Shown one piece after another: positions 1-62,754 of a DNA stretch of 64,000 bases. The stretch spans positions 1,757,929 through 1,821,928 of the forward strand of contig OU015570.1 of assembly GCA_907165135.1 (NCBI GenBank), in the 5' to 3' direction. Each line of letters begins with the position of its first letter. Position 1 is the stretch's first letter. The translations under genes and the position numbers were made by a program. The notes under the pieces are model-generated. The model had not been told where the DNA came from, ran no database searches, and worked only from the letters and a program-made list of their open reading frames with translations. The DNA comes from Oikopleura dioica (Eukaryota > Animalia > Chordata).

Positions 1-1
1 G

Positions 2-1944
2 CCTGATTACGCATCACACCTGGCTGGTCAAATGTTCACGAGTCGAAAAGAGAAGAGAACCTGGGATGCCTCGGAAACCCTGCCCGAGTCCGCTCCCCAT
101 CGCGAAAGTAAAATTCCACGTGACTCCGACGAAGCTCGCCCGTCTGCCAAAAATGAATTTCTCGTGCCAAATCCCGTCGACACTCCCGGAGGTCATACTG
201 TTTCCGCTGCAAACGTATCGTCTACACCCGTGAAACATCTTCCTGCTGCATCCGACGTGGATTTTGATGCGAGTCGGATCCCTCTTTCCGACAATTTAGT
301 ATCCGCTATGTCCCTCGATCACACGGAGTTTACCTCGGAGAAAACCATCTCCGAACACGAGACAAAAGTCCCTGCGAGCGATGACACTATGACATCTCAA
401 GACAAAACCACCATTCTTATGAACACGATCGATCACCTGATCGACAAGAATGCCAGTCGGCTCTCTGTCAAGAGCGAGCCTGACGCTCCAGTTCCTATGG
501 AGCTGCCGATTCTGCCCACTTTTGTGCCACGTGACCATCTATACACTCGCTGGTATTTAGCAATTTAATTCAAGCCTCCTTTAACTTACTGACCTTTTAG
601 TTACTCTCTCCAAAATTTACCGCCGAACTTGTTTCCTGAGTTCGAAATCGACGTGTTAAAGTACTATTCACGTGGCCCACTTCTTGTACACCACGTGTTC
701 GTCGATCTACGCCAGCAAGCTGGTCTTCAGCACCGAATTCTCCAGCATCCATTCTCACGTGTCAAACAATTTTTATTACATATAGGTACGGCTTTGTTTC
801 GACGCACACGACTCATATTATAGGTCGGACACTTCATTACTCACGAGTGGCTCCTCCATGCAAATTCGAACTTTCCTTTCCTCCGACCGTGGAAATTGCT
901 GCCAAAGGTTTCACCCCGCATTTGCTCGTGATCTTCGTGGTTTACTCACGTGTTATCTCACCTCACTTAGTGAATACTATCGCGGAAGTTGTTTTATCCA
1001 GCCTCGCACGGAAACTCAGAAGCGGCGCCTCACCGAGCTCGCGCATTCATTGTGCGACAACTTTTTCGCTCAGAATTTCGGACACGATTATCGGCCTCCA
1101 TTTCTCGTCGAATATGACTCGAATCGTCGACCTAGAGAGTAACCAGCCATTACCCAGTATCGTCCTTAAAACCTCACGTGAACGCAAACGAAACAACTTC
1201 ACTCTACCACGATTTTCTTGCACTCTACCACTCATCTTTCTGATCTTTGCCGTTCTTTTCTTCATCCTCGTCGCTTACGCCGTTTCCTTCTTCCGCGAAA
1301 AGCTCACAGCCCTCGCACACTACGTCCAGTACTTTCACACGTTTAGCCCGGTAATGCCTTGCAGAAAACCGCATTAATATAATATAATTTCTAGCTTCCC
1401 AAAACTCATCGACGCCGACGTCAAATTGGTTTCGACGAGCTCATGTCCGTCAGTGCTGCCGCCTATGACCCCGAGCCTGTTCCTGAGAACTCCCCCGCCA
1501 CCACCACCATGCGTTTTGGTGGTGCAAGCCCTTGGGAATGGTAAGATCAATTATCCCTCAACCATCATGACGTATTCAAGGGTCACTTTCGGGGTCGCTT
1601 CTCTGTTTTTCTTCTCGTGTCTCCTCTGCGCCTGCGGCCATCAAATAACAGCTGTCCTGAGACAATGCACGTGGAGCCTTCCGAATCCTGGATCCAGTCA
1701 CGACGATGGTGAATTCTCCGAAGTAATCGCTCTTCGACGACAAATAGCCGCAGACAAGCAAATGATCAAAGCGCGCAAGGCTCACTCAAAAGTCACGAAG
1801 AAACTTCGCGCTCTCGGCCCCGCTGACGCTGAAATTCCATCCGTCGTCCCGGCGACCGACGCTCACATTCCTACACGTGCTTCTTCTCGAAACGCAGAGC
1901 CACTCCTCCACGTCGCTGACCAAGAAAACTCCTGCTGGGCTTAA
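2..1944 (+). CDS. Predicted 5-exon gene, antisense and convergent to element A1 pol; join(<2..552,601..785,824..1350,1395..1540,1581..1944); ~590 aa (580 from ATG at 32); disordered N-terminus, two hydrophobic segments
   Basis: Four GT-AG introns (553-600, 48 nt; 786-823, 38 nt; 1351-1394, 44 nt; 1541-1580, 40 nt). Each removes an in-frame stop and together they join the ORF-track pieces 32..568, 629..823, 847..1377 and 1426..1944 into one frame. TM-like segments LIFLIFAVLFFILVAYAVSFF and VTFGVASLFFFSCLLCAC. AATAAA motifs downstream near 2020 and 2090. Confidence 0.72.
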
Positions 1945-2157
1945 ATCTCCCTTTCTTTTGTCAACAAATTTCGCAAATTATTCATCGAATTATGATAGAA
2001 ACTTGTAGCCACCATTCTAGGAATAAATTTTCTCACGTGAAAACAACTCCGGACTCAGCTTTCTTTAGAAAGGCATTAAACATTTTTAAATAAACAAAAT
2101 TCACAAAGAAAAACCAAAAAACTTAATCTACAAATAGCACGTGTAACTTTGTTACCA

Positions 2158-3093
2158 CTAGTTATTGCTCGGGCAACCCAGCAATCTTTCTTGACTAATC
2201 CTGGGGCTTTTCCACTGATCTCGATCCATAACTAACGACCTCGCGTGCATGAACTCAGGCAGTATTAGGTCTTCGTTGTGACCAAGCATCATCAGGCCTG
2301 CGTTATTTGGGTCCTTCACGCAGTCTCCGTCCACGATCGCTCTAATTGCTTTCAAGGACCACGAGTAAATCCTCTTCCTTTTCAAACCAACCTTTTCCGT
2401 GAAGCAAAGGCCCTCAAACCAATCTACTCCTTCGGGATATTCCTCCGTGCCCGTGACGACAAAGTAGGGGTTTAGGTCATTCTTCTGCCATTCCCCTTCT
2501 AAAAGAATATAATCGCCAACCTTGATTGGCTTCTCAAATTCGTCATCGTAGCTATCACCCTTCTCGTAGGGATGAAACTTAATTGGCTTTCTCGTGCGAC
2601 CTTTCTCCTGGTTCTTAATAAATGCTTTTCTGCCTCGCTCGCGACTCAACGCGATGTGTTCCAAAATTTTATTCATGTCAATTTTCAGCGGGCGATCAAA
2701 TTTATCACGTGAAAAATATTTCTCATTTGGAGTATACCCGTGTCTGCTCGGATTTTCATTCAAGCGAGCCGCTGCCTCAACTGCGACTCGCATGTGCGAT
2801 CCTTTCTTTGAGATTTCCGCCTTCAAAAACATCGTTAACTTTTGTACACGTGAGTCCATTGGTGAAAGGTGATTTTTGGACTTACTGGTCTTTTCTGGCA
2901 AATGGATCTCAATCTTCCAGTCTTTCCAAACATCCCTCGTGGCAATACTCTTATTCACACTGCAACCATCCAAAAAAATCCTAATTCTCTTCTCTCGGAT
3001 CGGACCTCTCAAAAACTCACCTACAGCTCTACACAACACTTCCGTGCCTTTATCCGCAGTCATTTCCGAGTTCTTGATCGGATACAGCTTCGT
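2158..3093 (-). pseudogene. pol: A1 integrase core and C-terminus (same frame as upstream pol, separated by premature TAA at 3094-3096)
   Basis: In-frame continuation SG*TKLYPIKNSEMTADKG...IFLDGCSVN; integrase-like core. Confidence 0.8.
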
Positions 3094-6000
3094 TTAACCC
3101 GAAATGGCTTCCGAAACGACCCAGAACTTCAACGTAGATTCCTCGTTTCCTGGGTAAGAATTTCTCGTGATAACGTCAGCGAACAAAACTTGACCTAACT
3201 CCTTGGGTGACTCGTCGTTGTATTCCTTCGGGATTACCTCGATTTTCGCCTGCTTTCTGAAGTATGTGCACCCAGTGCAGCTCCTATGGACTTTCTCGAC
3301 CACCTTGTTCATACCAGCCGACCAAAATGTGCATCTCACGTGTTTTTTAAAGGCTGTAAGGGATGTACATCCCGTAACTTTCATCATGTGTCTCACGAGC
3401 AACTCCAAATACTCCAAAGGAACTACGATCGGCTCGACCTTTTTATCTTCCACGAAGAACGCCTGTTTACACAATATTCCTACATCGTTCTCTTCCTTGA
3501 TTTCACACGACTTTCTCAGGCTTTCAGCGATCCTGTCCCCGTATGGCATTTTCCCATTCTTACGCTTCGATTCTATCGCTCTCTGCACGTGTCTGTCCGT
3601 AAGCTGCATCCTCCTGATCAGCCGAAAATTCCCCAGAAACTCCTTCATCGAGAACTTTTTCAAAAAGTCCTCCACCTCCACGTGAACTTCTCGCGCTTCC
3701 TTAATAAAAGGAGTTTCCTCCTGCGACTCATTCGATTCTTTCAATCTTTTAGCCCGTGCTCTCGTGGCCATCATGCAGATTTCCTCTTCCACCTCAATTG
3801 GCTTCAGATCTGTCAACTCCGTGGCCTGCTTCAGCGTATGTCTAAAATCATTCACGTCGTCGATCAGGAAAATGCTATCGAACATCTCAATGCTCACCAC
3901 GGGTTCCTTTGATTTGCACTCAACTCTTCCTGCGTGATTCGCAGTTAACTTTGACAAGTACCCATGGCTGTCCACCTCTACGCACATCCTACAATCCCCA
4001 TTGCATGGTTTTAGATGTGCCTCTGATCGGGACAGCATGTCTGCTAAGTCTACTTCCGCCGATCTGCAACTCTTGTACACGATCCTCACATTGTACGACA
4101 TCAGTTTCACGAGTCTTTCGTTGATCTTATAATCTTCAGCCAATTCCTGCCCGTTTAAACATCTTTTATACAACTTCTCTACCGAGATCGAGTCTGTGAT
4201 TACTGTCACTGGATTGTTCACGAGGTCAATTTCCCACGAGCAGTGAATTACTGCGTTCAGAATCCCGTGCAACTCGAGCAAACAGCTGCACCATTGCGTG
4301 TTGTTATTCGCATCCGGCCTCTTCTTGGAGTAAAGCTTATTAAGCCTTACTTTCCCTTTCTCGTCCTTTTGGTACAAAAATGCACCCGTGCCCTTGTTAC
4401 TCGAGTCAACCACGAGAAACGTCTCGAACTCTGCAACCACCGGATACAGTGAAACTAAACTTTCGTCCAGCTTTTTCTGTACTTTCTTATAGCCTGCTAT
4501 TAACTCGTCTGTCCAATTAATATGCTCCGCCAGGCTTTTCTTATTCTTCGTAGCTTCATACAACGGGGCCAAAATCTCCGTTCTAAACGGGAGGGAATCC
4601 GCAATGTATGTGATCCAGCCGAGTACTCTTTTCATGCATTTCACAGTTTTTATGCTCGTGTACTCCTGGTTCGCAATTTTCTCCAACACGTGTGTACTAG
4701 CTCTAATCGTGCCATTCTTTACTCTTCTTCCCAAAATGGAGATGTCTTTACTCAAAAACGTGCACTTCTTACCTTTCAACCTCAGATTAAACGAACTCAA
4801 CGTCTGCAAGACCGCCGCCACGTTCTCAAGAAATTCTTCCGGGGTGTTACCTACGATACGAATGTCATCGACGTATATAAAACAATATTCTCTGTGGCTA
4901 TATAAGATAATCTTTAATTTTTCACGTGCTAATAGCGGGCTCGAAATCCAACCCATCGGAAGCCTTCTGTACGCCATAGGCCCCACGTTCGGATGATCCA
5001 GACAAAAATGTGGCCACATAATCGGGTGGAAAGGGAAACAATAAAACATCGAAGAGATGTCAATGCACGCGATGAGACCCGTTTCAGTGTATTTCGCCAC
5101 CTTCTGGAGCACGTACTTGATTGAATCAGTCTGCCTCGCAGAATGCACTGTGTCATCATTGATTTTCGCTCTCTTACAATCCGCCACCACGCGGATTGAT
5201 CCCGCGCACAACTCAACCTTTGCAGTTTCCGCGTTCTTCTTCCCCACGGGAAAGAAGCTCAAGAAATGCTTCGGAGTCATGTGCTTAGGTAGGAACCCGA
5301 TCACGCCTTCACTGGCTTCCTGATCTAACTTGTCCACGAGAGCTTTCACAACTGACTCGGACATCGACTTGTTATAACTCTGTCTCACCACCTTGCCGGA
5401 CGTGTTACCCGTTATTTCGGCGTAAATTTGGAACTCTTCTCCTGGTACACAGCCCTGTGTCCCTTCGTACAGAACCTTCTCCTTCTCCAGGATCGACAAC
5501 AGTCTCTTCTTGTAATTCTTTCCGTCCGGGATGTCCTTCAATACCTCATCGTCCACGTCAATATTACACTCCATCCACGTGTTCTTCTCACGAGCCGCCT
5601 GATGCATTTTTTCCAGCTTTCTTGCATAATCCACACGTGAATCTGGGTTCATTCTACCCGTGGGAGTCATATCGATGACTGAACTTGACACACTCGGTAC
5701 CAAGGTTTCGCACCTAGCAGCCGGCATCAACCTCTCATTCTTCACGACTTCGTAAAGATTGAAGTTGTGAACCAAATTTTCTAATTCAAAAATTTCGCTT
5801 CTTTTCTTGAAACCCAAATTGCTTATGTCTACACCCCGAATCGACACTCTAGTTTCAAAGCAATTCTCTCTTGGGATACACTCGATTTTCGCGCAATTTC
5901 TTGCCAAATCGCCAAGCGAAACCAACACGTTTCTGTCACTGACTTCACAAACTTTCGCATTCACAAAGGAAATTTTAACGTTCCTACGTAGCCTTAACGT

Positions 6001-6510
6001 GAACGACACAGTGACTGGTAAAAATTTCAGCAAACTGCCTCCGGCCACCTTTCCTGCACCTGCACGTGACTTGCTTATCCTTGTTCCTTTACTTAATTTT
6101 ATCAACTCAAACAGACTCTCACTTAACAGTGACACTGATGCCCCTGTATCTAGTAGAAGTTTAAACCACACGTGTTCATTTTTATTCAAAACCTTCTCGC
6201 AATCAGGCAAACCGAAGTAAATCTGCAACAATCTTCTATCCGGCTCCTTCTCTTCGTCACGTGTTGTTTCCTCTACTGTTGCCCTTAAATTACAATCGTT
6301 AATCTCTCTAATCTTTGCGAATATCTCACCGTCTAATCCGAAGTCTTCATAACCATCTTTGTCATCCAAATCCAGCTCACTGAGTAGGGCGCCAATGTCC
6401 TCACCCGATTCGGACCCCGAATACTCACAGTGAGACCGAAGCGCCAATAACTCGTGAACACCAACATCTTCCTGGAGGGTGTAAACACGTGGACTGCCTG
6501 TCTGCTTCAC
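3094..6510 (-). pseudogene. pol: A1 protease-RT-RNase H-integrase N-terminus
   Basis: Protease LLDTGAS; RT CIDISSMFY...FIYVDDI; RNase H VVDSS...ELHG...ITDS...LADMLSR; Zn-binding SCTGC; LFAD. Confidence 0.92.
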
Positions 6511-8042
6511 CCCTTCTTTTTAATAAATCGGTTAAATTTACCTTTGATATCCGGGCGTTTGAACTGACCCTTAGGTTTGTAGAACTTACTGGGGTCTTGT
6601 TTCTTTAGTACTTCCAGATCCCTCTTGTTAAAAGACTGACCCGTGTAAACCAAAATTTTGCCCGTGCCAAACTCGACCTTCAAATCCGGACTGTTCGTCA
6701 AATGGCTCAACCCGATGTCTCTACCATTTGGTCTCGGGAAACTCGCCCTATTTCGGGCCATCCATTTTTCAGCCCGTTGCGCACCAAACTTCTTTGATAC
6801 GAAAGCGTTTAATTCAGCCTCAATTTCTTCGTCCAAAGCGTTCGCCTCGTCATCTTCGGGAACGAAACTCTTCACGTGATTCGACTTTCTATTCTTGACT
6901 GCACTGCTCTGCTGAGAACAAACAAACGCCAATGTCGACCGAAAATCGTTGGTAAACATATCTAATGCAAGTTCAACTTGTGTTAACTCCACGTGACCCT
7001 GAGCCTTCGATGCCTTGTCAATCTCGTCTAGAAACAATCTCTTTTCGACGATGACATCTCGACTCAATAAGTCCTTGAACTCTAAATGGCGCTTAGTGGC
7101 AACTTTTTCTAAAATATTCTCCCATTGCCTGGGTTCCAAGCTAACTGCGCACAAAGCCAATGCAGTAGATTCGGCGAATGGGCCAAAGATATCAGGGGTT
7201 GTGCAATACTCCTCCCTAAATCTACTTGCGCCCATTGGTGTTCCACGTGGAAATCTGTTAGGTACAACAGCATTATTTGTCATAATTTTCCTCATCAACT
7301 TTCTGATGATTTCATACGTGGAACTTGTCTTGATATGAGACAATTCACCTTTCCCGACAACCTGAAGAAATTTCAGGAATTTAAAATAGTCGTTGGTTCT
7401 GGAATTATCTGCATAATCACGTGTCATAATTTCTGCATACTGATTCAGGCTTGTCACGTAACCGTTTCGAATATCCTCGCGTGAAGTATCCTCCACGTTC
7501 TCACAAACTACTGGGCAGATCTTACGCACCACCGCCAAAACCTCGTCAGCTGCCGATGGTCTCCCATCCACGCGTTCGAAGTATCGCAGTAATGGCAATT
7601 CTAAACCCGGGAAAAACGTATCTTTGAAAGCTCGTTCACTCTCTTCACGATTCTGGACTGCATTGTCCATGAATCCATCATGCGTGGCGTTTACGGTGCA
7701 GTGGCTTAGAGTACCCCTGTACCTACCAGCTGCCCGCCAACCTTCGAACATTGCCAGCCCATCGGGAACCGATAACCGGCCCGTCAAATCAGGCAACCTG
7801 CCGAAATGCTCTCCTCATAAAAGAGGTACGTTTGAGACTTGGTCTGCAAACCTATTTTCACGATCATTTTTCCTGATTTCTCCGGAAAGAATTCCAGACA
7901 CGTGGTTAAGCCATCCAAGAATTTTCTGGGACCTAACACTATCGTCCGCTGCCGTAAAGGCCAGTGGCACGATTTCTTTCCCGGTATAATACTTCAGCCC
8001 CGGAGGACACTGAAACATACCGTTATTATCATACGCGTTCAT
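6507..8042 (-). pseudogene. gag: A1 gag-like region (ATG at 8042; TGG>TGA stop at 7815-7817; 1-nt deletion near 6515 relative to the fused ORF of A2)
   Basis: Colinear with A2 ORF 30599..33469, in which this region is fused in frame to protease; no zinc knuckle seen. Confidence 0.8.
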
Positions 8043-8193
8043 AATTATAATGGCCAAGTCAACGACAAGGTCTCGAGGTTTGAATTACTGAGTAGCAGTC
8101 CGTGCCCTAAGCCTTGGTCTCGGAATCAGGTAATTCCTTCCCTTAGCTTTTAGAAGTAAGGTCTCGGAATCAGGTAATTCCTTCCCAAAGCTT

Positions 8194-8203
8194 CTAGTCA
8201 CCA
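8194..8203 (-). promoter_or_regulatory. A1 primer-binding-site-like TGGTGACTAG
   Basis: Begins with TGG; identical in A2 (30442-30451); lies between the LTR-like region and gag. Confidence 0.6.
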
Positions 8204-8650
8204 CGATAAATTGCTCCTGCAGAAACTCAACACCCTCAATACTCTTACACGTGTAAGCGTTCTAACGTTTATTCTAGTACAGCAGTTAGGCTCAACAAAA
8301 CAAACACGGGTTCTACAGCGTCTCCAGCGGTGATGATGGAGGCCCGAGAAGGATACACGTGATGGAAGTTGATGTTGGAAGCTGCGTCTCCACGTTCACT
8401 GAACAAACCTGAAATCCGATTAGTCTGCTGTAGCTCCACTAGAATCTCTAAATAAACGTGCTTCACCTCGAGTTCGAACGCTAAGCGTATGAGCAACGGT
8501 TGGTGCGAACTCAGCCGACCGTTCTCGCGCGTAGGTTTTCTTCCTAAGGGCAGGCGAGCCTGGCCGAACTATTATTCTATCGTCTAAATCCTAACGCAGC
8601 CAAATGGAACTGGTGAATCGGAATGACCTGAAAACTCAAATAAGTATTAC
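8204..8650 (-). repeat. A1 putative 5' LTR (outer boundary not resolved)
   Basis: Homologous to 30045-30441; contains AATAAA about 70 nt upstream of the PBS. Confidence 0.55.
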
Positions 8651-9379
8651 CACACGCCTTACACACCTTTCCGCAAAATTCCAGCCTGATAAGCCACGTG
8701 AGCACTGCACAAGTACAGTTTTTCTCACCTAAACCCGCGCGCTCCGAGGAAAGAAAAAATTGACTGCATCTTTTGGAAGTCTCTGAGGTATCGTTTATAG
8801 TTTATTTATAGGTTTTCAGGTATGTGGAATTCAAAATCGTACTTTCAGAGTGATATCATGAATATTTAACAATAAAATGACAGAATAAATTAATGAAAAA
8901 AACAAATTCTAGCGCTAAATCTTTTGTTTTCGAAAAATATAAAAGTGCAGTTTAAAAGAGAATATTTGTTTATGTATAACCTCTAATTTTCAGAAGATTA
9001 TCTCAAGAGAAAGGCAAAATCGACAAAAATTGTACAGCTCCTGTAAGGGGGTTCTTTAGGCGCGCTCCCGTAATACGGGTAATATAGAGAATTTAAAAAA
9101 ATTGTTTTATTTACTCATTTAAAGATTAATTTTATAATTTTAAATTTAATTAATTGCTCATTTTTTGATATTTCTTTTAAAAGAAAGAATTTCAATTGAA
9201 TTCCGCGGCGACCATCCTAATAAGTGCCTGAGGGCGAACTCGGCGCCGCGCGCTGCGCGCCACACAAAAAGGCAAAAACTGACTGTAATAAATACAGTAT
9301 GTTAGTCAAGGGCCTCCCGTTTCTCTACGCCAAAAATGTGTTCTTATTGGTCGAACTATCAATACAGTTTGTTTCCAAA

Positions 9380-9490
9380 TTTCCGTCTCAGCCCCCTTCC
9401 TTGGTTTTAATTTTAAGGGGCTTGACATAGGCAGGGAACTCTGACTTGATCAATTTCAGGTGTGTCCCCAACCCCACCCACACCCATCGT
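9380..9490. repeat. Dispersed repeat also at 39075-39145, 62695-62810 and 63565-63676
   Basis: Shared ccgtctcagcccc..ttttaaggggcttgac..ttgatcaat sequence. Confidence 0.7.
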
Positions 9491-11729
9491 TTTAAAAATT
9501 TAAATTATTCTTTTTTAAAACTAATTATTGTTTTTAGTCCTTAAATAATCGATTTGAAAAAATTCATGATTTCACTTTATATTTTTGACTGACGTCTTAT
9601 TTATTATTTTTATTTTCTTTTTATTTTTATTTCTTATTCATCCAGTGAATTTCTGATCATATTTTGCGTGCCGACCCTCTATCACGCGATGCGCGCGTGA
9701 GCGCTTGGAAGAAAAATATTGCCCGCTGACCCAAGTTTTTGAAATGCCTTCCAAATAATTTTCATGAATTCGAGATCAGCAAATTATATTTATCATTTTT
9801 GTTTTTTAAATTTTTTATTTAGGTTTGACTAACGTACTAAACCCGTTTTTGCCATTTTTGAGGCTTATTATCTCTTTAACCCTTAATTTTTTAAGAAAAT
9901 TTAGAAAGCAAAAATTCTATTACCATTATCTAAAAGATATCAAAAATTTAAACGCATACAATATGTATTTCGGGTGGCTGATTTTTGTGCATGAACCCTA
10001 CTTATAATGTCAAAAATGAGTTTCTCTATGAAATAAGGCGCGGAGCGCATATAGACCCCTGATATTATTCTTTTAAAAGTTTGTGAACCGGGTTCATACA
10101 GATTGTGAACCGGGTTCAGAATTGTGAACCTGGGCACCCTACACTGTAGGGCCTACAGTCATTATGGGGAACTCTGGCATTAACAAGTCCAGAGTTTATG
10201 ATCTTTGCTTTTGTTCAAATCGAGCACCTTAGCCTTGAAAGGTAAACACACTCAAATAAATGGAAAAATTGCGTCGAAAAGCAAGAAGAAAATACATAGA
10301 ATACAGGTGTAGGCATGCTTGTAGCTGCAAATTTTTAAAGAAACGGCCAACTAGACGCATGCTGAAATCGTACGTTATTTTCATTTCTTTGTCTCTAGAA
10401 AAGAAAAAATTGTTTGCATATTCAATTATTCTTCTCATTTGACATTCTACTATCAAAAAGTGCAAAAATTCGGGATTTTCGCCAAAAACCGCGCAATTGC
10501 AGTTCGCGCAATTCCAAGACCTGACTGTATGTCAAGGAGGTGACAGAGCTTTTAAAATGGCTTATTTTGACCAAAAATTTTACTTAGAAAAAACGCAAAA
10601 ATTTTGACTTTTCAAAGTGCCAGCAGATTCATATGAATAAGTGCTCTATAGATAGCTTAGACAAAGTTGTATCAGAGGAAAACAGTTTTGATTGAAAATC
10701 AAGCCACAGAGGCGCTACAGAGCATTAAGAATAAGATCGGGGAAATCTATCAGAGGGAAAAAAAGGAGATCGACTTTGAAAATGGCCAAAAGCTGGGTTT
10801 TTCGCGACTATCAATTTCTTAAGGGCTATTATTAGAGGTGATTCGCCCTTTCAAATTCAATTTCCATATTAGAGTTTCCTCATTGAGAAATGAGCTTTAA
10901 AAAATGCCCCTAATTTCTGAGATAGCTAAGCCCGAAAAACAGGTTCGACCTCAAAGTTTGCCAAATCGGGGGATCCCTTATGCCGCATAAGTTATGCGAA
11001 TTTTTGGCCCTGATAGTTTTTAAAATGCTTTCGGTTTGAGGCGGAAATTTCTCTTTCAATCTGAAAAATTTTTCGCTTACGCATTTAGACGCACATTTTT
11101 GTTTTCGCTTCAGGCGAATTCGTCTTTGCTTCGCCAGATAAAGCTTCACTTTTTTATGTTCTTTCGCGCTTGTCATTGATTTTTTCGCGAATTTTATATG
11201 CCTTCCTGCAACCATCAAATCGGGTAATCGATTGGTATTAAAACTGAGTTCATGAGAATAGGAAAACTATATAAATTATTTTATATAATTAGGTTTTCTA
11301 TCGGGAAGGCGGTGCGCGGCGCGGCGCTTTTCCTATCAAATGTTCGATCCCTTATTCCGTAAATTGCGAACGCCGTTCGCAAAATAGCCTTTGCGAACGA
11401 GGCCGCCCGCCACCCCTTACTTTGAATAGATTTTCAGTAAAAAACATTTTGATATATTCATTTTGATGACGCTGATTCATAATTTGCCCTTAAAATTTGC
11501 TTTTTTTGTCCAAAAAGCAAATACAGTTTTTTATGGAATTTTTGGACATCGAATTTTTGGACATTTTTGCTATTTTAAGGGGTTTTCTTAGGACACTTTT
11601 CATAAGTGCCCGTATCAAATTTTTGGACATTTTCTGCGCCTAATTTTTAAATTTTCTGTTTTTTTTTTTGCCAGATATGAAGTTTTTTCTTATTAAAAAT
11701 CTAACTTTTTCTTTGAGAAAAATAAGATT

Positions 11730-11928
11730 TGTAAGGGTTTAGCAAATCCTGCGGCTTGCGAGAAGTTCCCCACTTTGCGTATTCTCTAGTGCGGTGAATA
11801 AAAGACAAGAACTCTGGAAAAGGTGTTGCTCGAGTTTTATTTACAAGACGACTGAAGTGCACGCGTAGCGCGCAGTAAGATGTGGCCTCAGATAAAATCT
11901 CCGGCCTCAGGGTTCGTAAAACCTCACA
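11730..11928 (-). repeat. B 3' LTR
   Basis: No difference from 17829-18027 seen by eye; PPT (TAGGGGGGA on minus strand) at 11929-11937. Confidence 0.95.
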
Positions 11929-12032
11929 TCCCCCCTAGAATTTAGTATGAGGGTACAGTAGGACAAGATTTACATCGCGTGTCGGCTTCTGAGAAGTAGT
12001 TGATGGACAGGCGAGGTCTTTTCGAAATTGCT

Positions 12033-17234: not shown

Positions 17235-17818
17235 ATTCAGAGACGAAGACGGAAGTGAGCTGGCGAGACGTACGAAAAGAGCTGAGCCGACTGGTTATCT
17301 GTAAGGTAAGACTGGTACCTGGGCCGATCCCTTTGACACTAGATAGTTGAAGTCTAGGTCAAATTATAGGGATAATAGGCGAGCCGAGAGCAACAGAAAT
17401 CCCCAAAACAGTTTTCAGATAGCCAACGACTGGTGGGTGCGGCGAGGAGAAGAGCGAAGTAGCAACAGCAGCGCGGGCCGGACTAGAATGCGCGAGAAAT
17501 CAGCAGCGAAACGGTTGTACCTGGCCTGACCCCAGTGAACTCAGATGGAGATCACTTTTAGGGGCTTGCGGAGCGGGAGCTAGTGGCGACGGTTGGCTGA
17601 TTCGATCAGCGGGAGTGCGCGAAAAGTTTTACGCCGTTGGTTCCACAGGAGAAGAATGCGCGGTCTTGGAACGGAAAGGGCGTCTTCCAGGAAGAATTCA
17701 GGTTAAGCGTCGACGAAGAGTTGATTGGAGAGCGGTTGATTGTTCGAGGATCCTTGTAGAATTAGATTTTACCGGTTTGTTGTACTCGAGGAGTCGTCCT
17801 GTCTTCGCACAATTACGA

Positions 17819-17826
17819 TGACACCA
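17819..17826 (-). promoter_or_regulatory. B PBS TGGTGTCA (matches 8 nt of the canonical tRNA-Leu PBS)
   Basis: 2 nt from the end of the 5' LTR. Confidence 0.65.
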
Positions 17827-17828
17827 CT

Positions 17829-18027
17829 TGTAAGGGTTTAGCAAATCCTGCGGCTTGCGAGAAGTTCCCCACTTTGCGTATTCTCTAGTGCGGTGAATAA
17901 AAGACAAGAACTCTGGAAAAGGTGTTGCTCGAGTTTTATTTACAAGACGACTGAAGTGCACGCGTAGCGCGCAGTAAGATGTGGCCTCAGATAAAATCTC
18001 CGGCCTCAGGGTTCGTAAAACCTCACA
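17829..18027 (-). repeat. B 5' LTR
   Basis: Direct repeat of 11730-11928. Confidence 0.95.
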
Positions 18028-30036: not shown

Positions 30037-30044
30037 AATTAGTA

Positions 30045-33000
30045 CTTTCGTAAGATTATAGACGGTAGAATTGGGTACTGGTCAGGCTCGCCTGCCCCGA
30101 GGAAGAAAACCTACGCGCGTGACCGGTCGGCTGAGGCTGCACCCAACCGATCTCATACGCTTAGCGTTCGTTTACTCGAGGTGAAATACGTTTATTTAGA
30201 GATTCTAGAGAAGCCACACCAAACTAATCTAAATTCAGGTTTGTTCAGTAATCGCGGAGACGCAGCTTCCTACATCGATCATCATCACGTGTATACATCT
30301 CGGGCCTCCATCGTCGACGCTGGAGACACTGTAGATCCCGTGCTGTTTGTTTGAGTTAACTGCTGTACTAGAATAAACGTATCGAACGCTTACACGTGTA
30401 AGATAACGAGGGTGTTGAGTTTCTGCAGGGGCAATTTATCGTGGTGACTAGAAGCTTTGGGAAGGAATTACCTGATTCCGAGACCTTACTTCTAGAGGCT
30501 GAGGGCAGGAATTACCTGATTCCGAAACCAAGGCTTGGGCACGAACTGCAACTCAGTTATTCAAACCTCGAGTCCTCGTTGTTGACTTGGCCTACAATAT
30601 GAACGCGTATGATCATAATGGAATGTTTCAGTGTCCTCCGGGGCTGAAATATTATTCCGGAAAGGAAATCGTACCACTGTCCTTTACGGCGGCGGACGAT
30701 AGTGTAAGATCCCAGAAGATTCTGGGATGGCTCAATCACGTGTCGGGAATTCTCTCTGGAGAAATCCGAAAGAGCGATCGAGAAAACCGGTTTGCTGACC
30801 AGGTTTCAAATGTCCCTCTCCTTTGGGGCGAGAATTTCGGCAAATTGCCTGATTTGACGGGCCGGTTATCGGTGCCTGATAGTCTTGCGATGTTCGAAGA
30901 GTGGCGTTTAGCTGGTAGATACCGTGGAGTGTTAGAAAATTGCACGGTCAACGCCACCCATGATGGGTTTGCGGATAATGAATTCCAGGACCGGATGGCG
31001 AGTGAGAGGGCTTTCAAGGAAACGTTCTTTCCAGGCCTAGACTTGCCGCTACAGCGTTATTTCGAACAGGTTGACGGTAGACCGACGGCGGCTGACGAAG
31101 TACTCGCGGTAGTAAGAAAGATTTGTCCAATTGTTTGTGTAAACGTGGAGGACACTTCACGTGAAGATATTAAAAATGGTTATGTAACGAATCTAAACCA
31201 TTACGCTAAAACTATGACTCGTGATTACGCCGATAACTCACGCACGAATGATTACCTGAAGTTTTTGAAATTTGTTCAAGTTGTTGGTAAGGGAGAGTTA
31301 TCCCATATCAAGACCAGTTCCACTTACGAAGTAATCAGAAAGTTAATGAAAAAGATAATGACAAATAACGAAGTGATTCCAGGTAGATTCCCACGTGGCA
31401 CCCCAATGGGCGCAAGTCGCTTCAGAGAGGAGTTTTGCACAACCCCAGATAGATTCGGGCCGTTTGCAGAAGCAACAGCATTGGCGCTATGCGCAGTAAG
31501 CTTGGATTCAAAGAAATGGGAGCAAATTCTTGAGAAGGTTGCGGCAAAGCGACACTTGGAGTTCAAGGAACTGTTGAGCAGAGACGTGATTGTGGAAAAA
31601 AGGCTTCTCTTGGACGAAATCGACAAGTTGTCTAAAGCTCAAGGGCACGTGAAATTGACGCAGGTGGAATTGGCGCTAGATATGTTCACCAATGATTTCC
31701 GTTCAACACTGGCGTTTGTCTGTTCTCAGCAGACCATGGCAGTCAAGAATAGGAAATCAGATCACGTGAAGAGTTTCGTTCCCGAAGAAGACGAGGCGAA
31801 CGCTTTGGATGAAGATATAGAGGCGGAGTTTAATGCTTTTGTCTCTAAAAAGTTTGGCGCACAGCGAGCGGAAAAATGGATGGCGCGAAACAGAGCAAGT
31901 TTCCCGCGGCCAAATGGAAGAGAGATGGGCTTGAGTCAGCTGACGAATAGCCCAGATTTAAAGGTTGAATTTGGCTCGGGGAAGATTTTAGCCTACACGG
32001 GTCAGTCCCTGAATAAGAGGGATTTGGAGACATTGAAGAAGCAAGACCCGGGTAAGATTTTCAAGCAAAAGGGCCAGTTCAAACGCCAAGATATAAAAGG
32101 AAAGTTCAACCGATTTATTAAAAGGAAAGGCGTGAGGCAAGCTGGAAGTCCACGTGTATACACGCTTCAAGACGAGGTCGGTGTGCACGAGTTGCTTGCA
32201 CTTCGCTCGCAGTGCGAATATTCAGGCTCTGAGTCTGGCGAAGACATCAGCGCTTTGATCAACGAACTTGACCTGGAGGAGAAAGATGGCTACGAAGACT
32301 TTGGCTTAGATGGTGAGATTTTCGCTAAAATACGAGAGGTAAATGACTGTTATTTAAGGGCGACAATAGAAGAGACAACACGTGACGACAACAAGGAACC
32401 GGACAGACGTTTGCTGCAAATTTACTTTTGCCTACCTGATTGCGAGAAAGTTATGAATAAATCAGAACACGTGTGGTTTAAATTGTTACTGGATACGGGT
32501 GCATCTGTATCGCTTTTGAGCGAAGCTTTGTTTGATTTGATTAGGCCTTGCAGAGGCACAAAGGTGAAGAGAGCACGTGCAGGCGCAGGCAAAGTAGCTG
32601 GTGGAAGTTTACTTAGGTTTCTCCCAGTGACCGCGTCGTTCACGTTGAGGCTGCGGAGGAATGTGAAAATCTCGTTCGTGGACGCGAAGGTCTGCGAGGG
32701 AGATGATAGAAACGTGTTGGTGTCTTTAGGAGATTTAGCAAGGAATTGCGCTAAAATTGAATGCATCCCGAGAGATAATTGCTTTGAAACTAAGGTTTCG
32801 CTTCGTGGAATGGACATCAGCAATTTGGGCTACAAGAAGAGCAGCCAGGTCTTCGAATTAGAGAATTTAATTCATAATTTCAACTTATATGAAGTTGTGA
32901 AGAATGAAAGATTGTTTAAAGCCTCGAGGTGTGGGACATTTGTGCCAAGCGTCTCGAGTTCCGTTATAGACATGTCACCCACGAATCGCCTCAACCCAGA

Positions 33001-34035
33001 TTCACGAGTAGAGTACGCCAGAAAGCTCGAGAAAATGCATCAAGCCGCTCGGGAAAAGAACACGTGGAAGGAGTGTAAGATTGACGTGGACGACGAAGTC
33101 TTGAAAAACATTCCGGACGGAGAGAAGTATAAGGAGCGCTTGGTGTCGATATTAGAAAAGGAGAAAGTGTTATACGAAGCAACACAAGGATGCGTGCCGG
33201 GGGATGAATTCCAGATTTACGCCGAGATCGTTGGAAACACGTCGGGCAAGATACTTAGACAAAGTTATAGCAAGTCGATGAGTAAATCGGTGGTGAAGGC
33301 ACTCGTGGATAAACTGGATCAGGAAGCTAGTGAAGGAGTTATTGGGTTTTTGCCTAAGCACATGACTCCTAAGCATTTCTTGAGTTTTTTCCCCGTGGGC
33401 AAGAAGAATGCGGAAACAGCGAAAGTGGAGCTGTGCGCTGGATCGATAAGAGTAGTAGCGGATTGTTAAAGAGCGAAGATAAATGACGACACAATCCACT
33501 CGGCTAGGCAGACTGATTCTATAAGATACGTGTTGCAAAAGGTGGCGAAATATACGGAGACTGGTCTCATCGCATGCATAGATATTTCGTCGATGTTTTA
33601 CTGCTTCTGTTTCCACCCAGCAATGTGGCCACATTTTTGTTTAGATCACCATGAGAAGGGGCCAATGGCTTATAGGAGACTCCCGATGGGCTGGATTTCT
33701 AGTCCGTTATTAGCACGTGAGAAACTGAAAATTATTCTATATAGCCACAGGAAGTATTGCTTCATCTACGTGGACGATATATGTATTGTTGGTGATACAC
33801 CGCAGGAGTTTCTGGAGAATGTAGCAGCCGTGTTGCAGACGCTCAGCACGTTTAATTTAAGATTGAAAGGCAAAAAGTGCACCTTTTTAAGCAAGGATAT
33901 TTCAATTTTAGGCAGACGCGTGAAGAATGGCACAATTAGAGCTAGTACACACGTGTTAGATAAGATAGCTAATCAAGAATACACAGGGATAAAAACGGTC
34001 AAATGTATGAAAAGAGTTCTTGGGTGGATCACGTA
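30045..34035 (+). mobile_element. Family A copy A2, truncated in RT by a DNA transposon
   Basis: LTR-like 30045-30441, PBS 30442-30451, gag-pro-RT colinear with A1; the rest of pol does not resume after 36985. Confidence 0.9.
30599..34035 (+). pseudogene. gag-pol: A2 fused Gag-PR-RT (premature TAA at 33467-33469)
   Basis: ORF-track 960-aa ORF plus in-frame continuation containing FIYVDDI. Confidence 0.9.
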
Positions 34036-36983
34036 CCGTGGTTTTCCATTTTAAGAGCGCCCAATTTAAGAGCGTTTTCGCCAACATTTTGCAAATTATG
34101 TTATCTGCGAAAATTCCAATTTAAGAGCGTTTTTGAAGATTTTTATGCAATCAAAAAATTTTTAGACTCAAATAAATCATTAACTAAAACGTTGTGGAGG
34201 AGTGTGCGAGGCCATCGGGTAGACCCCCGGCGCTGCCGAGCATGCCCCGCTACCTCAGGCCTCCGGATAATGGAGACATCAGTCTTGAGGAGTCTTGATC
34301 AGTCTGGCCTAGAGTCTTGCCCAGTCCTGCCCAAGCCGAGTCCCACTCTTACTGGTGACTGAAGCGGTTGTCGAAGCTTCATGTCACCGGGGAGATTGGA
34401 GGCAAAAATAAAGAAAGAAAAAATATTTTTTATCCGATGCCGCTAAAAAGAGAAAATGGACCGCTCGCTGCCCAACAACTTTTTGGAACGCTGAAATTGC
34501 CTCTGGAAATAATTCCCGCCGCCGCCGTTTACCAGTAAAAACAGTAAGGAATTTATAGATAAAGAAGATCTTTGATTAAATGTATCGAAATTTGGAATTT
34601 TTCTTGGAATTTAATTATGCTTCACGATTGCCGCCGCCGTAATAATAATAAGAAGTTTTGGATGGAAAAAATTTTTGGACTGAAAATGTTGAAATTTTGC
34701 AAATTTTCTTGAAATTGAAGCCCCGCTCACTGATTCATTATCAATTTTATGGGGACAGAAAATTAAAAATGGAAACTGCTCATGGACAACATTGGATAAA
34801 ATTTTTTTTTGCTCTCGATTCGATGGATTTTTTGCTTTATTCCGGATAGATGACATTTAAATTTACGCCGATACAACGAAGATTTTCTATCGCTTTAGAA
34901 GAACTTGCATTTTTTTATATTATGCTTTGGAGAAGAAAAAACCAGAAATTAATCTACAAATAGTGAAATTTCTACAAAAATTTGCTAATTCATGGAAGCC
35001 TCGCTTAATTATGGGGACAAGAAAGTAAATTGCTAGAAATATTTATGCCGTGTGGATTATCTTTTCTGACCTGGATATCTATTGGATTTTTGCAACACTA
35101 AAACGGTAAAGTAAGAAGATTGGAATGCTCAACACTAACTTGGACCGCTCGCCGCTTCACGACACTGAAGAAAAAATTGACATGAAATTCGATCGCCTTT
35201 GAAAATTTTCGCCGCCGCCTTTTCATCAAGAAGAATCTACAGTCACTGACACTTTTTGAAGAGTTTTCTTTCTCATGGAAGCCCGTTATAGTTTAGAGAC
35301 GAGAAAAAACACAGAAACTCATTTTATGAAGATTGACCTCTGGATTTTCGAAACTTGACTTGTTCTACGATACTTGGACCATTGCTTAAGCGCTTGCTTT
35401 GGAAATGCTAAAAACAGAAAAAGTACTTGGAGAACGAATTTGGAAGATTTCAAAATTAGAAACTACACAACGAAGCACATATTTTCAATCAATGACGATG
35501 AAGACGATTCTCAGATAAGACGCATCCGATAAGAATTTGAAAACAGTTCACACCAGACATGGGAACCGACTGACAGACCTACTGAGCTGCATGGCCGTCA
35601 CTTATCAAAACCGTCATAGATTGACCGAATTCTTTCACAAAGACACACAGAAGCCACGAGACAAAGACATGAGAACCTCGACATTGGTCGGGACGCCGAC
35701 TGCTTAAATGTCGTCACTTATCACATTCAAAATGAATATCCTGACTTTCAGACAGAAGATAACTTAGACATTAGGAGAAGAAGCACGGAAGTAGTGCACT
35801 CATCAGACATGACAAGAATACACGGGAAACGTAAATGATGAAGAACACGATGAAGAAAATCGAAAACATAGAAACAAAGAAGATACGATGATGAAGAAGT
35901 TGCTGAAGAAGAAGCACAGAGGAGGAAAGCTTTCCCGTCCTTAGAGAGAAAAAGGACGACCAGCGACGGCACTCTCACCCTGGAAGAGCCCTGAAAGACC
36001 AGTAGAGGGAAGGGTTGTAAGAAGAGATGCATGGGATGCAAGGAATGCCGAGGACAGGCACTTAGTCGCTGAAGGGTATGGTACAGAGCTGGTACATACC
36101 GGTTATGTGGTAAAAGTATTTTTCCTTTGACGAAGAAAATGTGTATATGCGTCAACATTTCGTAAAGGCAATCTACATCCACATAACGAGAATATATATA
36201 TAACTAGAACGTTGTGGAGGAGTGTGCGAGGCCGTCGGGTAGACCCCCGGCGCTGCCGAGCATGCCCCGCTACCTCAGGCCTCCGGATAATGGAGACATC
36301 AGTCTTGAGGAGTCTTGATCAGTCTGGCCTAGAGTCTTGCCCAGTCTTGCCCAAGCCGAGTCCCACTCTTAACGTGTAATCTCTGACTGCTTTTCCGGCC
36401 ATTTTAAAGTCAATGGTTTGGCAGTGTCGGCTCCTTCTGTCATTTGAACTTGAGGTTCTTCTTCAATCTCCATCGCCGACGGACCATCAGGGTCGGAGCT
36501 CTTTTGCTTTTAATCTGATTCCTAGATATTTAATTTACCTATTCCTACAAAGGCTAGAAAATGTACCCTGAGGCATGTCTTCCCCATCATTTTCCTTCGG
36601 ATTATCTATAAGATCTCCATGACAGTCTTTCTCCCATCCTTTCTTTTTGAGCCTTCACCAGAATCTGCGCATATTTTTTCTATTAAGCCAAAGACATGTG
36701 TTTTTCTTTTCTTCTCCTGGCATTTTCGTTGTTTAAATTTTGAAGAATGAAAGAGATCAGATTAAGAAAAAGCGCTCGAGCAAAATCCTGAAAAAATCAC
36801 TCACGTTCTCATCTTGATATACAATTACTTTTGCTTCTAGATCTTTTCTGTTTCATACTTTCGAAATTCCCTGAAAAATGAAAATAACCACTGTCATCCT
36901 ATATCGATAGAAAAATTTCCAATTTAAGAGCGTTTTAAGCAAACCCTGTCATCTAAAAAACGCTCTTAAAATGAAAACCACGG
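34036..36983 (-). mobile_element. pogo-like non-autonomous DNA transposon carrying a nested 2.2-kb insertion
   Basis: TA|CCGTGGTTTTC(C)ATTTTAAGAGCG ... CGCTCTTAAAATGAAAACCACGG|TA; the minus strand resembles the transposase remnant of 24134-24773. Confidence 0.8.
34193..36371 (+). mobile_element. Unit bounded by 159-bp near-identical direct repeats (34193-34351 and 36213-36371), internal region eroded
   Basis: Two differences seen between the repeats; ACGT on both outer flanks; TGGTGACTGA just inside the left repeat. Confidence 0.6.
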
Positions 36984-56063: not shown

Positions 56064-56084
56064 GCTATTTGGCATTTTCCTGGT

Positions 56085-62545: not shown

Positions 62546-62754
62546 TGGTATTTTTGGCCCCATTTATTTCTACTTGAAATGGAGAGATAAAATTTTGGGG
62601 ACACTATTACGAGGTTATAAAAAGTTATTTTCAAGGTTTTCAAAGAGAACCATAATTAAGCTAAAGACAATGATAATATAGATTTTTTAAATGATGGGTG
62701 TGGGTGGGGTTGGGGACAGAACTGAGATTGATCAACTCAGAGTTCCAAGCCTTT

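What the first reader, a model, noticed from the sequence alone, without database searches (positions are those of the whole stretch)
117..8700. Family A is saturated with the palindrome CACGTG, conserved inside coding sequence
Seen: manual count of about 32 CACGTG in A1 (8.7 kb) and 14 in A2 (4 kb). About 2 and 1 would be expected for a random hexamer, and I noticed only a handful in the rest of the window. 13 of 14 A2 sites are shared with A1 despite heavy synonymous divergence. They occur in all three codon phases (CAC GTG; xCA CGT Gxx; AAC ACG TGG), and one survives an amino-acid change (TCA/GCA CGT G). Established: CACGTG is the canonical E-box bound by Myc/Max, USF and MiT/TFE bHLH-ZIP factors, and 6-nt palindromes also seed retroviral RNA dimerisation. 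Inference: a nucleotide-level code spread along the whole element, such as a gene-body enhancer array, chromatin recruitment or multivalent RNA kissing sites.
Basis: partly seen in the sequence, partly recalled or inferred. Interest (0 to 1): 0.87.

Follow-up and report, generated by a model that had tools for sequence, protein, structure and literature searches.

The report
CACGTG-saturated retrovirus-like element family
Two old, diverged copies of one retrovirus-like mobile element carry about 17 times more copies of the six-base palindrome CACGTG than chance predicts, kept through silent-site evolution, so the element's DNA or RNA carries a second selected signal layered over its genes.

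Summary
The window holds 50 CACGTG. Copy A1 (1-8596) has 31 against 1.8 expected. Copy A2 (30047-34036) has 14 against 0.7. The other 51 kb has 5, about as expected, although it holds three other Ty3/gypsy elements. Codon-preserving shuffles give 2.4 against 17 observed in the A1 reading frames; a stricter context-preserving null gives 5.8. A1 and A2 are near saturation at four-fold degenerate sites (38% identical), yet 13 of 16 hexamers are shared. Four-fold sites inside hexamers are 18/21 identical. Identity is 97% inside the hexamer and 77% in its flanks. All 7 His-Val dipeptides, and 17 of 27 synonymous opportunities, are spelled CACGTG. Family A is a Ty3/gypsy-type gag-pol element whose closest named relative is an Oikopleura dioica protein (45% identity). 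Its density peaks in a 2.2-kb non-coding 3' part. Predicted RNA folding does not place the hexamers in hairpin loops. The best reading (0.45) is a dispersed array of E-box-type sites for a dimeric host bHLH factor acting on the element's DNA. RNA self-pairing and an element-encoded binder are not excluded.

The parts
1..8596 (-). Copy A1 of family A. It is a Ty3/gypsy-type retrovirus-like element with its genes on the minus strand. Its 3' end is cut by the left edge of the window. It carries 31 CACGTG.
   Evidence: Pfam RVT_1 and RNase H hits, and best solved-structure matches to Ty3 RT and Gag-Pol. The closest relatives are P0001 and P0002 (Oikopleura dioica) at 45% identity. The 5' bound is where homology with A2 starts. 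31 sites against 1.78 in dinucleotide shuffles.
1..2160 (-). 3' non-coding part of A1, downstream of pol. It has the highest hexamer density (5.1 per kb), with sites at 117, 528, 669, 692, 756, 947, 1175, 1668, 1874, 2034 and 2138.
   Evidence: 29-39 stop codons in each minus-strand frame. No Pfam match for any piece on either strand. No similarity to the 5' end of the element, so it is not the 3' LTR. 11 sites against 0.49 expected, 0 of 1000 shuffles reaching 11.
2161..6519 (-). A1 pol gene, in the order protease, reverse transcriptase, RNase H, integrase. It is interrupted by one in-frame stop. It holds 13 CACGTG, at 2706, 2847, 3337, 3586, 3679, 4687, 4923, 5576, 5634, 6063, 6169, 6258 and 6486.
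   Evidence: Pfam RVT_1 and RT_RNaseH hits, with weak aspartyl-protease and integrase zinc-domain hits. D[ST]G and YxDD motifs are present. The C-terminal 300 residues align with the C-terminus of P0001 and P0003. Stop count.
6510..8084 (-). A1 gag-like gene. It has no zinc knuckle and a basic C-terminal tail, and is interrupted by one in-frame stop. It lies in a different frame from pol. It holds 5 CACGTG, at 6873, 6990, 7244, 7418 and 7899.
   Evidence: Weak but significant alignment to the N-terminal part of the fused gag-pol relative P0003. No Pfam family. No CCHC motif; 12 K/R in the last 30 residues. Stop count.
8085..8596 (-). 5' terminal non-coding part of A1 (LTR and/or leader). It is more conserved between A1 and A2 than the genes are. 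It holds 2 shared CACGTG (8248, 8356) and a 38-nt tandem pair.
   Evidence: 86% identity to A2, against 77-78% in gag and pol. Tandem pair at 8116-8197. 2 sites against 0.08 expected.
30047..34036 (+). Copy A2 of family A. It comprises the 5' terminal part, gag and the first part of pol, and is truncated inside pol. It has one in-frame stop. It holds 14 CACGTG, at 30286, 30393, 30737, 31158, 31392, 31646, 31763, 32151, 32379, 32468, 32574, 33061, 33714 and 33950.
   Evidence: 78.3% nucleotide identity to A1 4606-8593 with only 12 gap columns. 14 sites against 0.70 expected. 13 sites shared with A1. Stop count.
8695..8700 (.). A CACGTG just outside the inferred 5' end of A1. Together with those at 29003 and 29595 upstream of A2, it is probably flanking DNA and not part of the array.
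   Evidence: The DNA upstream of the point where homology starts is unrelated between A1 and A2.

Best explanation
Family A is a Tor-like Ty3/gypsy retrovirus-like element of an animal, probably a larvacean tunicate. Its whole body, both genes and non-coding parts, carries a selected, dispersed array of one motif, the palindrome CACGTG.

Most likely the hexamers act on the double-stranded DNA copy. Each would be a class-B E-box-type site for a dimeric host bHLH or bHLH-ZIP factor. About one site every 280 bp would load that factor along the integrated element by avidity. This would set its transcription or chromatin state in the cells where the factor is active.

Selection appears to be for number rather than for exact placement. 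Most places where the protein sequence allows the hexamer are used, and density is highest where there is no protein to encode.

Shown here:
- the enrichment and its restriction to family A;
- conservation at otherwise saturated silent sites;
- a footprint exactly six bases wide;
- no display of the hexamers in RNA loops.

Inferred, not shown:
- action at the DNA level;
- the kind of binder;
- the direction of the effect.
For: Enrichment:
- 31 sites against 1.8 expected in A1 and 14 against 0.7 in A2.
- z of 31.6 and 23.2, with no other hexamer near.

Not explained by codons or peptides:
- 17 observed against 2.4 (codon permutation) and 5.8 (context-preserving null).
- All 7 His-Val dipeptides, 9 of 19 phase-1 opportunities and 1 of 1 phase-2 opportunities are spelled CACGTG.

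Selected:
- Four-fold degenerate sites are 38% identical outside the hexamers (JC distance 1.3) and 18/21 identical inside. First and second codon positions are 91% identical.
- Given the same amino acid, the codon is identical 24/27 times inside the motif against 447/952 elsewhere (Fisher 1.4e-5).
- CGT codons are conserved 6/7 times inside the motif and 0/5 outside.

Shape of the constraint, as expected for a short dimeric DNA-binding site:
- Identity is 96.9% inside the hexamer and 77% in the 15-nt flanks.
- There is no extended flank motif.
- Half-sites alone are not better conserved than background.
- The commonest one-mismatch variant (CACGAG/CTCGTG) occurs about equally on the two strands (11 and 9).

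Family-specific rather than a host or genome property:
- Three other Ty3/gypsy elements in the same window have 0, 1 and 0 sites and no comparable hexamer.

Against RNA loop display.

Precedents from papers:
- Tor elements of O. dioica carry tissue-specific regulatory determinants inside the element, downstream of the 5' LTR (PMC4402516).
- Yeast Ty1/Ty2 carry E-boxes inside the gag reading frame, occupied by the bHLH protein Tye7, that act downstream of the start site (PMC3384299).

From general knowledge: CACGTG is the canonical class-B E-box, and metazoan genomes encode several dimeric factors that bind it.
Against: - There are no binding, accessibility or expression data, so the binder is inferred from the motif alone.
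- Every site lies in the transcribed body, so an RNA-level role cannot be excluded.
- The flanks show no preference that points to one bHLH class; the only signal is depletion of G at position -1.
- In the 46-nt windows, which force the hexamer unpaired, sequence around the hexamers folds less stably than around controls (-3.6 against -5.1 kcal/mol, p = 0.016). This would also suit an accessible RNA element.
- At the A1 site positions, the peptides of distant relatives (45% identity or less) mostly could not encode the hexamer. The positions are therefore not ancient, and it is unknown whether the trait reaches beyond family A.
- Only two copies could be compared.
- The host is not identified by name.
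Confidence: 0.45

Rival explanations
1. RNA-level self-pairing. CACGUG is self-complementary, so 30 or more copies along the genomic RNA could give many weak contacts between RNAs, or long-range contacts within one RNA. These could help two genomes pair, be packaged together, or gather in granules.
For: - All sites lie in the transcribed body.
- The motif is a perfect 6-nt palindrome.
- The pattern suggests that more sites are better and that position matters little: 17 of 27 opportunities are used and spacing is near random (CV 0.77).
- With the hexamer forced unpaired, sequence around the sites folds less stably than around controls.
- The gag protein has no zinc knuckle, so packaging could be unusual.
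Against: - The hexamers are not more accessible than GC-matched hexamers in predicted local folds of the sense strand (medians 0.007 against 0.011 in A1, p = 0.38).
- They sit in hairpin loops of 12 nt or less at 6/32 sites, against 204/600 controls.
- No flank conservation or stem is visible.
- The three sites that differ between the copies show changes that would break both models, so they do not discriminate.
- A palindrome chosen for pairing strength has no reason to be the canonical E-box.
- These are predictions, not probing data.
Confidence: 0.15
2. A family-specific tag read by something other than a host bHLH factor. The reader could be an element-encoded protein (the gag basic tail, the integrase, or one of the long undescribed stretches of pol) or another host protein. 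It would mark the element's own RNA or DNA copy for packaging, transport or handling.
For: - The trait is strictly specific to family A within the window.
- Family A proteins are unusual. Gag has no Pfam family and no zinc knuckle. The integrase core is not recognised by Pfam. Long stretches of pol have no known domain.
- A dispersed, number-driven distribution is what dispersed recognition tags look like.
Against: - No DNA-binding or helix-loop-helix family was detected in any family A reading frame, even at E <= 1.
- A single-strand RNA binder would not need a palindrome.
- The identity of the motif with a universal host transcription-factor site would then be a coincidence.
Confidence: 0.15
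3. No function. The excess would be a by-product of base composition, codon or codon-pair bias, a repeated peptide, recent common descent, or a mutational bias that creates the hexamer.
For: - The two copies share ancestry, so shared sites are not independent gains.
- CACG half-sites and one-mismatch variants are also 2-3 times denser in A than elsewhere.
Against: - Dinucleotide, codon and context-preserving nulls all fail to reach the observed counts.
- An order-2 expectation is 4.3 against 32 in 1-8800.
- The sites occur in three codon phases and in non-coding DNA.
- Silent sites are near saturation between the copies, yet the hexamers persist.
- Conservation stops at the edges of the hexamer.
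- The one-transition variants CATGTG/CACATG are not depleted in A1: 3 in 8.8 kb, against 12 in 50 kb elsewhere.
- Other elements in the same genome region lack the excess.
Confidence: 0.03

Closest known systems
E-boxes inside the gag (TYA) reading frame of yeast Ty1/Ty2, occupied by the bHLH protein Tye7 (PMC3384299)
   Same: Both are E-box-type sites for a host bHLH dimer lying inside the coding sequence of an LTR retrotransposon, downstream of the transcription start. In Ty1 they affect the element's sense and antisense transcription.
   Different: Ty1 has three sites within 269 bp, of another E-box variant, and belongs to a Ty1/copia element of a fungus. Here there are 31 exact CACGTG spread over at least 8.6 kb, in gag, pol and non-coding parts, using most of the synonymous opportunities. 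No binding has been shown here.
Internal regulatory sequences and internal promoter of Tor elements of Oikopleura dioica (PMC4402516)
   Same: The closest named relative of family A comes from the same host genus. In Tor elements, determinants inside the element and downstream of the 5' LTR drive tissue-specific embryonic expression, and one promoter lies inside pol.
   Different: That paper defines no motif and does not mention CACGTG. Family A is only 45% identical to the nearest O. dioica protein. It shows no env gene in the window.
Su(Hw) binding-site array (insulator) of the Drosophila gypsy element (from general knowledge)
   Same: Both are repeated arrays of sites for one host DNA-binding protein, carried by a Ty3/gypsy retrovirus-like element and acting on chromatin.
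   Different: The gypsy array is a tight cluster of about a dozen sites in a few hundred bases of non-coding leader. Here the sites are scattered at near-random spacing through coding and non-coding sequence.
Dimer initiation sites (kissing-loop palindromes) of retroviral genomic RNA (from general knowledge)
   Same: Both are six-base self-complementary sequences in a retroelement's genomic RNA.
   Different: A dimer initiation site is one site, in the apical loop of a conserved stem-loop in the 5' leader. Here there are 31 dispersed sites, with no loop display and no conserved stems.
Dispersed over-represented oligomers of bacterial genomes, such as DNA uptake sequences and Chi (from general knowledge; an analogy only)
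   Same: Both are short exact words, many times over-represented, scattered through coding sequence in all reading phases, each weakly selected, and read by a protein.
   Different: Those are bacterial chromosomes with longer, oriented words. Here the word is a palindromic hexamer confined to one mobile-element family of a eukaryote.

Membership tests
Ty3/gypsy (Metaviridae-type) LTR retroelement, Tor-like | pol domain order: protease, reverse transcriptase, RNase H, integrase | tested here: met
   D[ST]G at pol residue 124 and YxDD at 549. Pfam RVT_1 and RT_RNaseH hits, with weak protease and integrase zinc-domain hits in that order. The best solved-structure matches are Ty3 RT and Gag-Pol. 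The C-terminal part aligns with the integrase end of relatives. The integrase core itself is not recognised by Pfam.
Ty3/gypsy (Metaviridae-type) LTR retroelement, Tor-like | Long terminal repeats with a primer-binding site and a polypurine tract | tested here: inconclusive
   No direct repeat pair lies within 1-9600. A1 runs off the left edge of the window and A2 is truncated, so only the 5' end can be seen. No tRNA gene in the window is available to match a primer site.
Ty3/gypsy (Metaviridae-type) LTR retroelement, Tor-like | Closest relatives are Tor elements of Oikopleura | tested here: inconclusive
   The best named hit is an Oikopleura dioica protein at 45% identity. The other close hits are unnamed proteins from marine assemblies. 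No Tor reference sequence was fetched for a tree, because of the bar on fetching.
Ty3/gypsy (Metaviridae-type) LTR retroelement, Tor-like | Third, env-like gene (present in many Tor elements) | tested here: not met
   The 2.16 kb after pol has 29-39 stops in each frame and no family match. Anything beyond the window edge is unseen.
Homotypic E-box (class B) array bound by bHLH or bHLH-ZIP dimers | Exact CACGTG core, palindromic, constraint limited to the core | tested here: met
   Identity is 96.9% inside the hexamer against 77% in the flanks. There is no extended motif. One-mismatch variants and half-sites are not clearly conserved.
Homotypic E-box (class B) array bound by bHLH or bHLH-ZIP dimers | Occupancy by a bHLH dimer and an effect on transcription or chromatin | not testable with these tools
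   No binding, accessibility or expression data for this genome are within reach.
Retroviral dimer initiation / kissing-loop palindrome | Palindrome displayed in the apical loop of a conserved stem-loop | tested here: not met
   Loop display at 6/32 sites against 204/600 controls. Accessibility is not above GC-matched hexamers. The flanks are at background conservation. These are predictions only.
Retroviral dimer initiation / kissing-loop palindrome | Located in the 5' leader | tested here: not met
   Only 2 of 31 sites lie in the 5' terminal non-coding part. The rest are spread through gag, pol and the 3' part.
gypsy-type insulator (clustered binding-site array) | Tight cluster of sites in the non-coding leader | tested here: not met
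   Mean spacing is 277 bp with CV 0.77, compatible with random scatter along the whole element.

The most novel reading that the evidence does not exclude
The hexamers are an RNA-level multivalent self-association code. Dozens of self-complementary CACGUG along the genomic RNA would let transcripts of this one family recognise each other, pair or condense together, for co-packaging or for gathering in granules near the germline. This would need no single dedicated dimerisation hairpin, and it would be written synonymously through the genes.
Probability: 0.13. Interest if true: 0.85.

Novelty: new variant of a known kind. Interest (0 to 1): 0.66.

Why it matters
Host-factor binding sites in mobile elements are normally found in LTRs or leaders, or as a few sites in the first gene. 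Here one short word is written through an entire retrovirus-like element. It uses about two thirds of all places where the proteins allow it, and it has been held while silent sites around it went to saturation.

That makes this a very clean natural example of a second code overlaid on viral-type genes. It also gives a directly testable handle on how an element family ties itself to one host factor, or to its own RNA. Occupancy, accessibility, RNA probing and a copy census would each give a yes-or-no answer.

If the trait extends to related families, it would point to a so far undescribed strategy by which such elements persist in compact tunicate genomes.

Tried and rejected
- **Composition, codon bias or peptide repeats as the cause.** Rejected by order-1 and order-2 expectations, dinucleotide shuffles, codon permutation and a context-preserving third-position null.
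- **Conservation as a side effect of protein conservation or of favoured codons.** Rejected.
- **A longer motif or a partner motif around the hexamer.** None found.
- **Regular, nucleosome-like spacing.** Not supported: CV 0.77, and 8% of random placements are as even.
- **Selection on half-sites or one-mismatch variants.** These are denser in A but not clearly conserved.
- **Hairpin-loop display or accessibility in the RNA.** Not supported.
- **Signature hexamers in the other elements of the window.** None comparable.
- **An env gene, or an antisense gene, in the 3' 2.2 kb.** No evidence. All frames carry many stops. The plus-strand ORFs of ~175 residues are what a G-poor strand gives by chance, and they have no family match.
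- **LTR pair, tRNA genes and Rfam families.** Nothing found.
- **Further family A copies in the window.** None.
- **Naming the host through a second element's pol.** Only unnamed marine-assembly proteins were close, and exact look-ups were blank.
- **Literature.** The searched library returned no paper linking CACGTG to Tor or other tunicate elements.
- **His-Val excess in relatives' proteins as a proxy for the trait.** Suggestive for P0003/P0004 (6 against 2.1 expected), absent in the O. dioica proteins, and too weak to use.


Full report
**1. The observation**

The window holds 50 CACGTG, against 8.0 +/- 2.8 in dinucleotide shuffles with a maximum of 15.
- 32 lie in 117-8700.
- 16 lie in 29003-33955.
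- 2 lie elsewhere.

Self-comparison shows that A1 4606-8593 matches A2 34036-30051 in inverted orientation, at 78% identity and with only 12 gap columns. The homology starts abruptly at A1 ~8596 and A2 ~30047, and the DNA upstream of that point is unrelated in the two copies. I take that point as the 5' end of the element. The sites at 8695, 29003 and 29595 are then flanking DNA.

With these bounds:
- A1 (1-8596) has 31 sites against 1.78 expected; 0 of 1000 dinucleotide shuffles reach 31, and the maximum is 7.
- A2 (30047-34036) has 14 sites against 0.70 expected.
- The remaining ~51 kb has 5 sites, which is about the ~5 expected.

CACGTG is the top outlier among all hexamers in both copies (z 31.6 and 23.2), and the next-ranked words are overlaps of it. 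Half of all ACGT in A1 lie inside CACGTG. There is no extended flank motif. CpG is not depleted anywhere in the window, with observed/expected about 1.15.

**2. What family A is**

The A1 genes lie on the minus strand.
- **pol.** It has Pfam RVT_1 and RNase H domains, with weak protease and integrase zinc-domain hits in the order PR-RT-RH-IN. D[ST]G and YxDD motifs are present. Its best solved-structure matches are Ty3 reverse transcriptase and Ty3 Gag-Pol.
- **End of pol.** The last 300 residues align with the C-terminal integrase part of relatives.
- **gag.** It has no Pfam family and no zinc knuckle, but it has a basic tail. It aligns weakly with the N-terminus of the 1965-residue fused gag-pol relative P0003.
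- **Relatives.** The closest named relative is an Oikopleura dioica protein at 45% identity. The others are unnamed proteins from marine assemblies.

I therefore read family A as a Tor-like Ty3/gypsy retrovirus-like element of an animal, probably a larvacean tunicate. The host could not be named.

- A1 gag has one in-frame stop.
- A1 pol has one in-frame stop.
- A1 gag and pol lie in different frames. A2 and the relatives P0003/P0004 read gag and pol in one frame. I cannot tell whether the A1 arrangement is natural.
- A2 has one in-frame stop and is truncated inside pol.
- A1 runs off the left edge of the window, so no LTR pair can be seen.

The 2.16 kb after pol has 29-39 stops in every frame and no family match on either strand. 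It is non-coding.

**3. More than chance and more than codons**

Each uninterrupted reading-frame piece was shuffled on its own, and only the counts were summed.
- Permuting synonymous codons gives 2.4 sites (maximum 8 in 2000) against 17 observed in A1. For A2 it gives 1.6 against 10.
- A stricter null keeps the amino acids, the codon usage and the base after each codon. It gives 5.8 (maximum 11) for A1 and 3.5 (maximum 8) for A2.
- The sites fall in phases 0, 1 and 2 (7, 9 and 1).
- Every one of the 7 His-Val dipeptides is spelled CACGTG. So are 9 of 19 phase-1 opportunities and the only phase-2 opportunity. In all, 17 of 27 places where the proteins allow the hexamer carry it.
- Density is 3.0 per kb in the genes and 5.1 per kb in the non-coding 3' part: 11 sites against 0.49 expected.

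**4. Selected, not inherited by default**

The two copies are old.
- Four-fold degenerate sites outside the hexamers are only 38% identical (Jukes-Cantor distance 1.3).
- First and second codon positions are 91% identical.
- Both lineages therefore diverged under strong protein-level selection.

Against that background:
- 13 of 16 hexamers are shared. Only 24% of all hexamer windows are fully conserved (P = 6e-7).
- Four-fold sites inside hexamers are 18/21 identical.
- Given an identical amino acid, the codon is identical 24/27 times inside hexamers and 447/952 times elsewhere (Fisher 1.4e-5).
- The rare Arg codon CGT is kept 6/7 times inside the motif and 0/5 times outside.
- One site survives a Ser/Ala replacement.
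- The footprint is exactly six bases wide: 96.9% identity inside and 77% in the 15-nt flanks.
- Half-sites outside full sites are at background conservation, 15/35 against 37%.
- Spacing is compatible with random scatter.

**5. Family-specific**

The same window holds three other Ty3/gypsy elements with good RT, RNase H and integrase domains. They have 0, 1 and 0 sites and no hexamer that stands out in a similar way. Host codon usage, a mutation bias or a general genome property therefore cannot be the cause.

**6. DNA or RNA?**

Evidence on the RNA side:
- In predicted local folds of the sense RNA, the hexamers are not more accessible than GC-matched hexamers.
- They sit in small hairpin loops less often than controls, 6/32 against 204/600.
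- Their flanks show no extra conservation.
- A looser model of many weak linear contacts is not excluded. In the 46-nt windows with the hexamer forced unpaired, sequence around the sites folds somewhat less stably than around controls.

Evidence on the DNA side:
- The constraint is confined to a perfect 6-bp palindrome.
- The commonest one-mismatch variant occurs about equally on both strands.
- The word is the canonical class-B E-box, read by several dimeric bHLH factors in all animals (general knowledge).

Precedents from papers:
- Tor elements carry tissue-specific regulatory determinants inside the element (PMC4402516).
- Ty1/Ty2 carry E-boxes inside gag that are occupied by the bHLH protein Tye7 (PMC3384299).

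I put the DNA-level bHLH array at 0.45, RNA self-pairing at 0.15, another binder (including an element-encoded one) at 0.15, and no function at 0.03.

**7. How old is the trait?**

At the A1 site positions, the peptides of relatives at 45% identity or less mostly could not encode the hexamer. For example, only 1 of 14 alignable positions in P0001 could. The individual positions are therefore not ancient. Whether related families carry their own sets of sites needs their DNA.

**8. Novelty**

The searched library returned no paper linking CACGTG to Tor or other tunicate elements. Binding sites inside element bodies are known. An element-long array written synonymously through the genes, with about two thirds of the opportunities used, is to my knowledge not described. 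I rate it a new variant of a known kind.

Noticed in passing
window 8085-8596 and 30047-30560: The 5' terminal non-coding part of family A is 86% identical between A1 and A2. Four-fold degenerate sites in the adjacent genes are only 38% identical. This part is therefore under strong constraint of its own (LTR, leader, primer-binding or packaging functions).
   Followed up: partly
window 8116-8197 (A1) and 30448-30529 (A2): A 38-nt unit is duplicated in tandem with a 44-nt period and is conserved in both copies. It contains CCTGATTCC. All four sense-strand CCTGATT in the aligned part of A1 are kept in A2. This could be a second, smaller conserved motif.
   Followed up: partly
window 6510-6519 region in A1 versus the A2 ORF 30587-33469: A2 and the relatives P0003/P0004 read gag and pol as one frame. 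A1 has them in two frames. I did not try to decide whether A1 uses a natural frameshift or is broken.
   Followed up: no
window 2161-4200 (minus strand): The family A integrase is very divergent. There is only a weak zinc-domain hit, and Pfam does not recognise the integrase core. The same holds for its relatives P0001 and P0003. pol also has about 300 residues between protease and RT, and about 270 between RNase H and the integrase zinc domain, with no known domain.
   Followed up: partly
window 11729-18027: This is an apparently young Ty3/gypsy element with identical 200-bp LTRs and a single 1733-residue gag-pol ORF. It is G+C-richer (51%) than its surroundings and has no CACGTG.
   Followed up: partly
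window 40739-47453 and 18892-22899: This is another Ty3/gypsy element with identical 309-bp LTRs and three ORFs. The third, at 46456-47085, has no family match. A 69-74% identical older relative lies at 18892-22899.
   Followed up: partly
window 52239-61839: This is a third Ty3/gypsy element, with 337-bp LTRs 98.5% identical. It has gag with a zinc knuckle, pol, and a 665-residue third ORF with no family match that could be env-like. A ~200-bp tandem array lies at 55102-56071.
   Followed up: partly
window 34181-34351 and 36201-36371: A pair of 171-bp direct repeats, 98% identical and 2 kb apart, lies about 145 bp beyond the truncation point of A2 (34036). It could be a small LTR-type insertion or remnant that cut A2.
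   Followed up: no
whole window: CpG observed/expected is about 1.12-1.16 both inside and outside family A. The window shows no sign of methylation-driven CpG loss.
   Followed up: partly
window 9383-9532, 39049-39154, 62648-63706: A short repeat of about 110-150 bp occurs at several places in both orientations, including tandem ~55-bp units at 62755-63077. It starts about 790 bp upstream of the inferred 5' end of A1.
   Followed up: no
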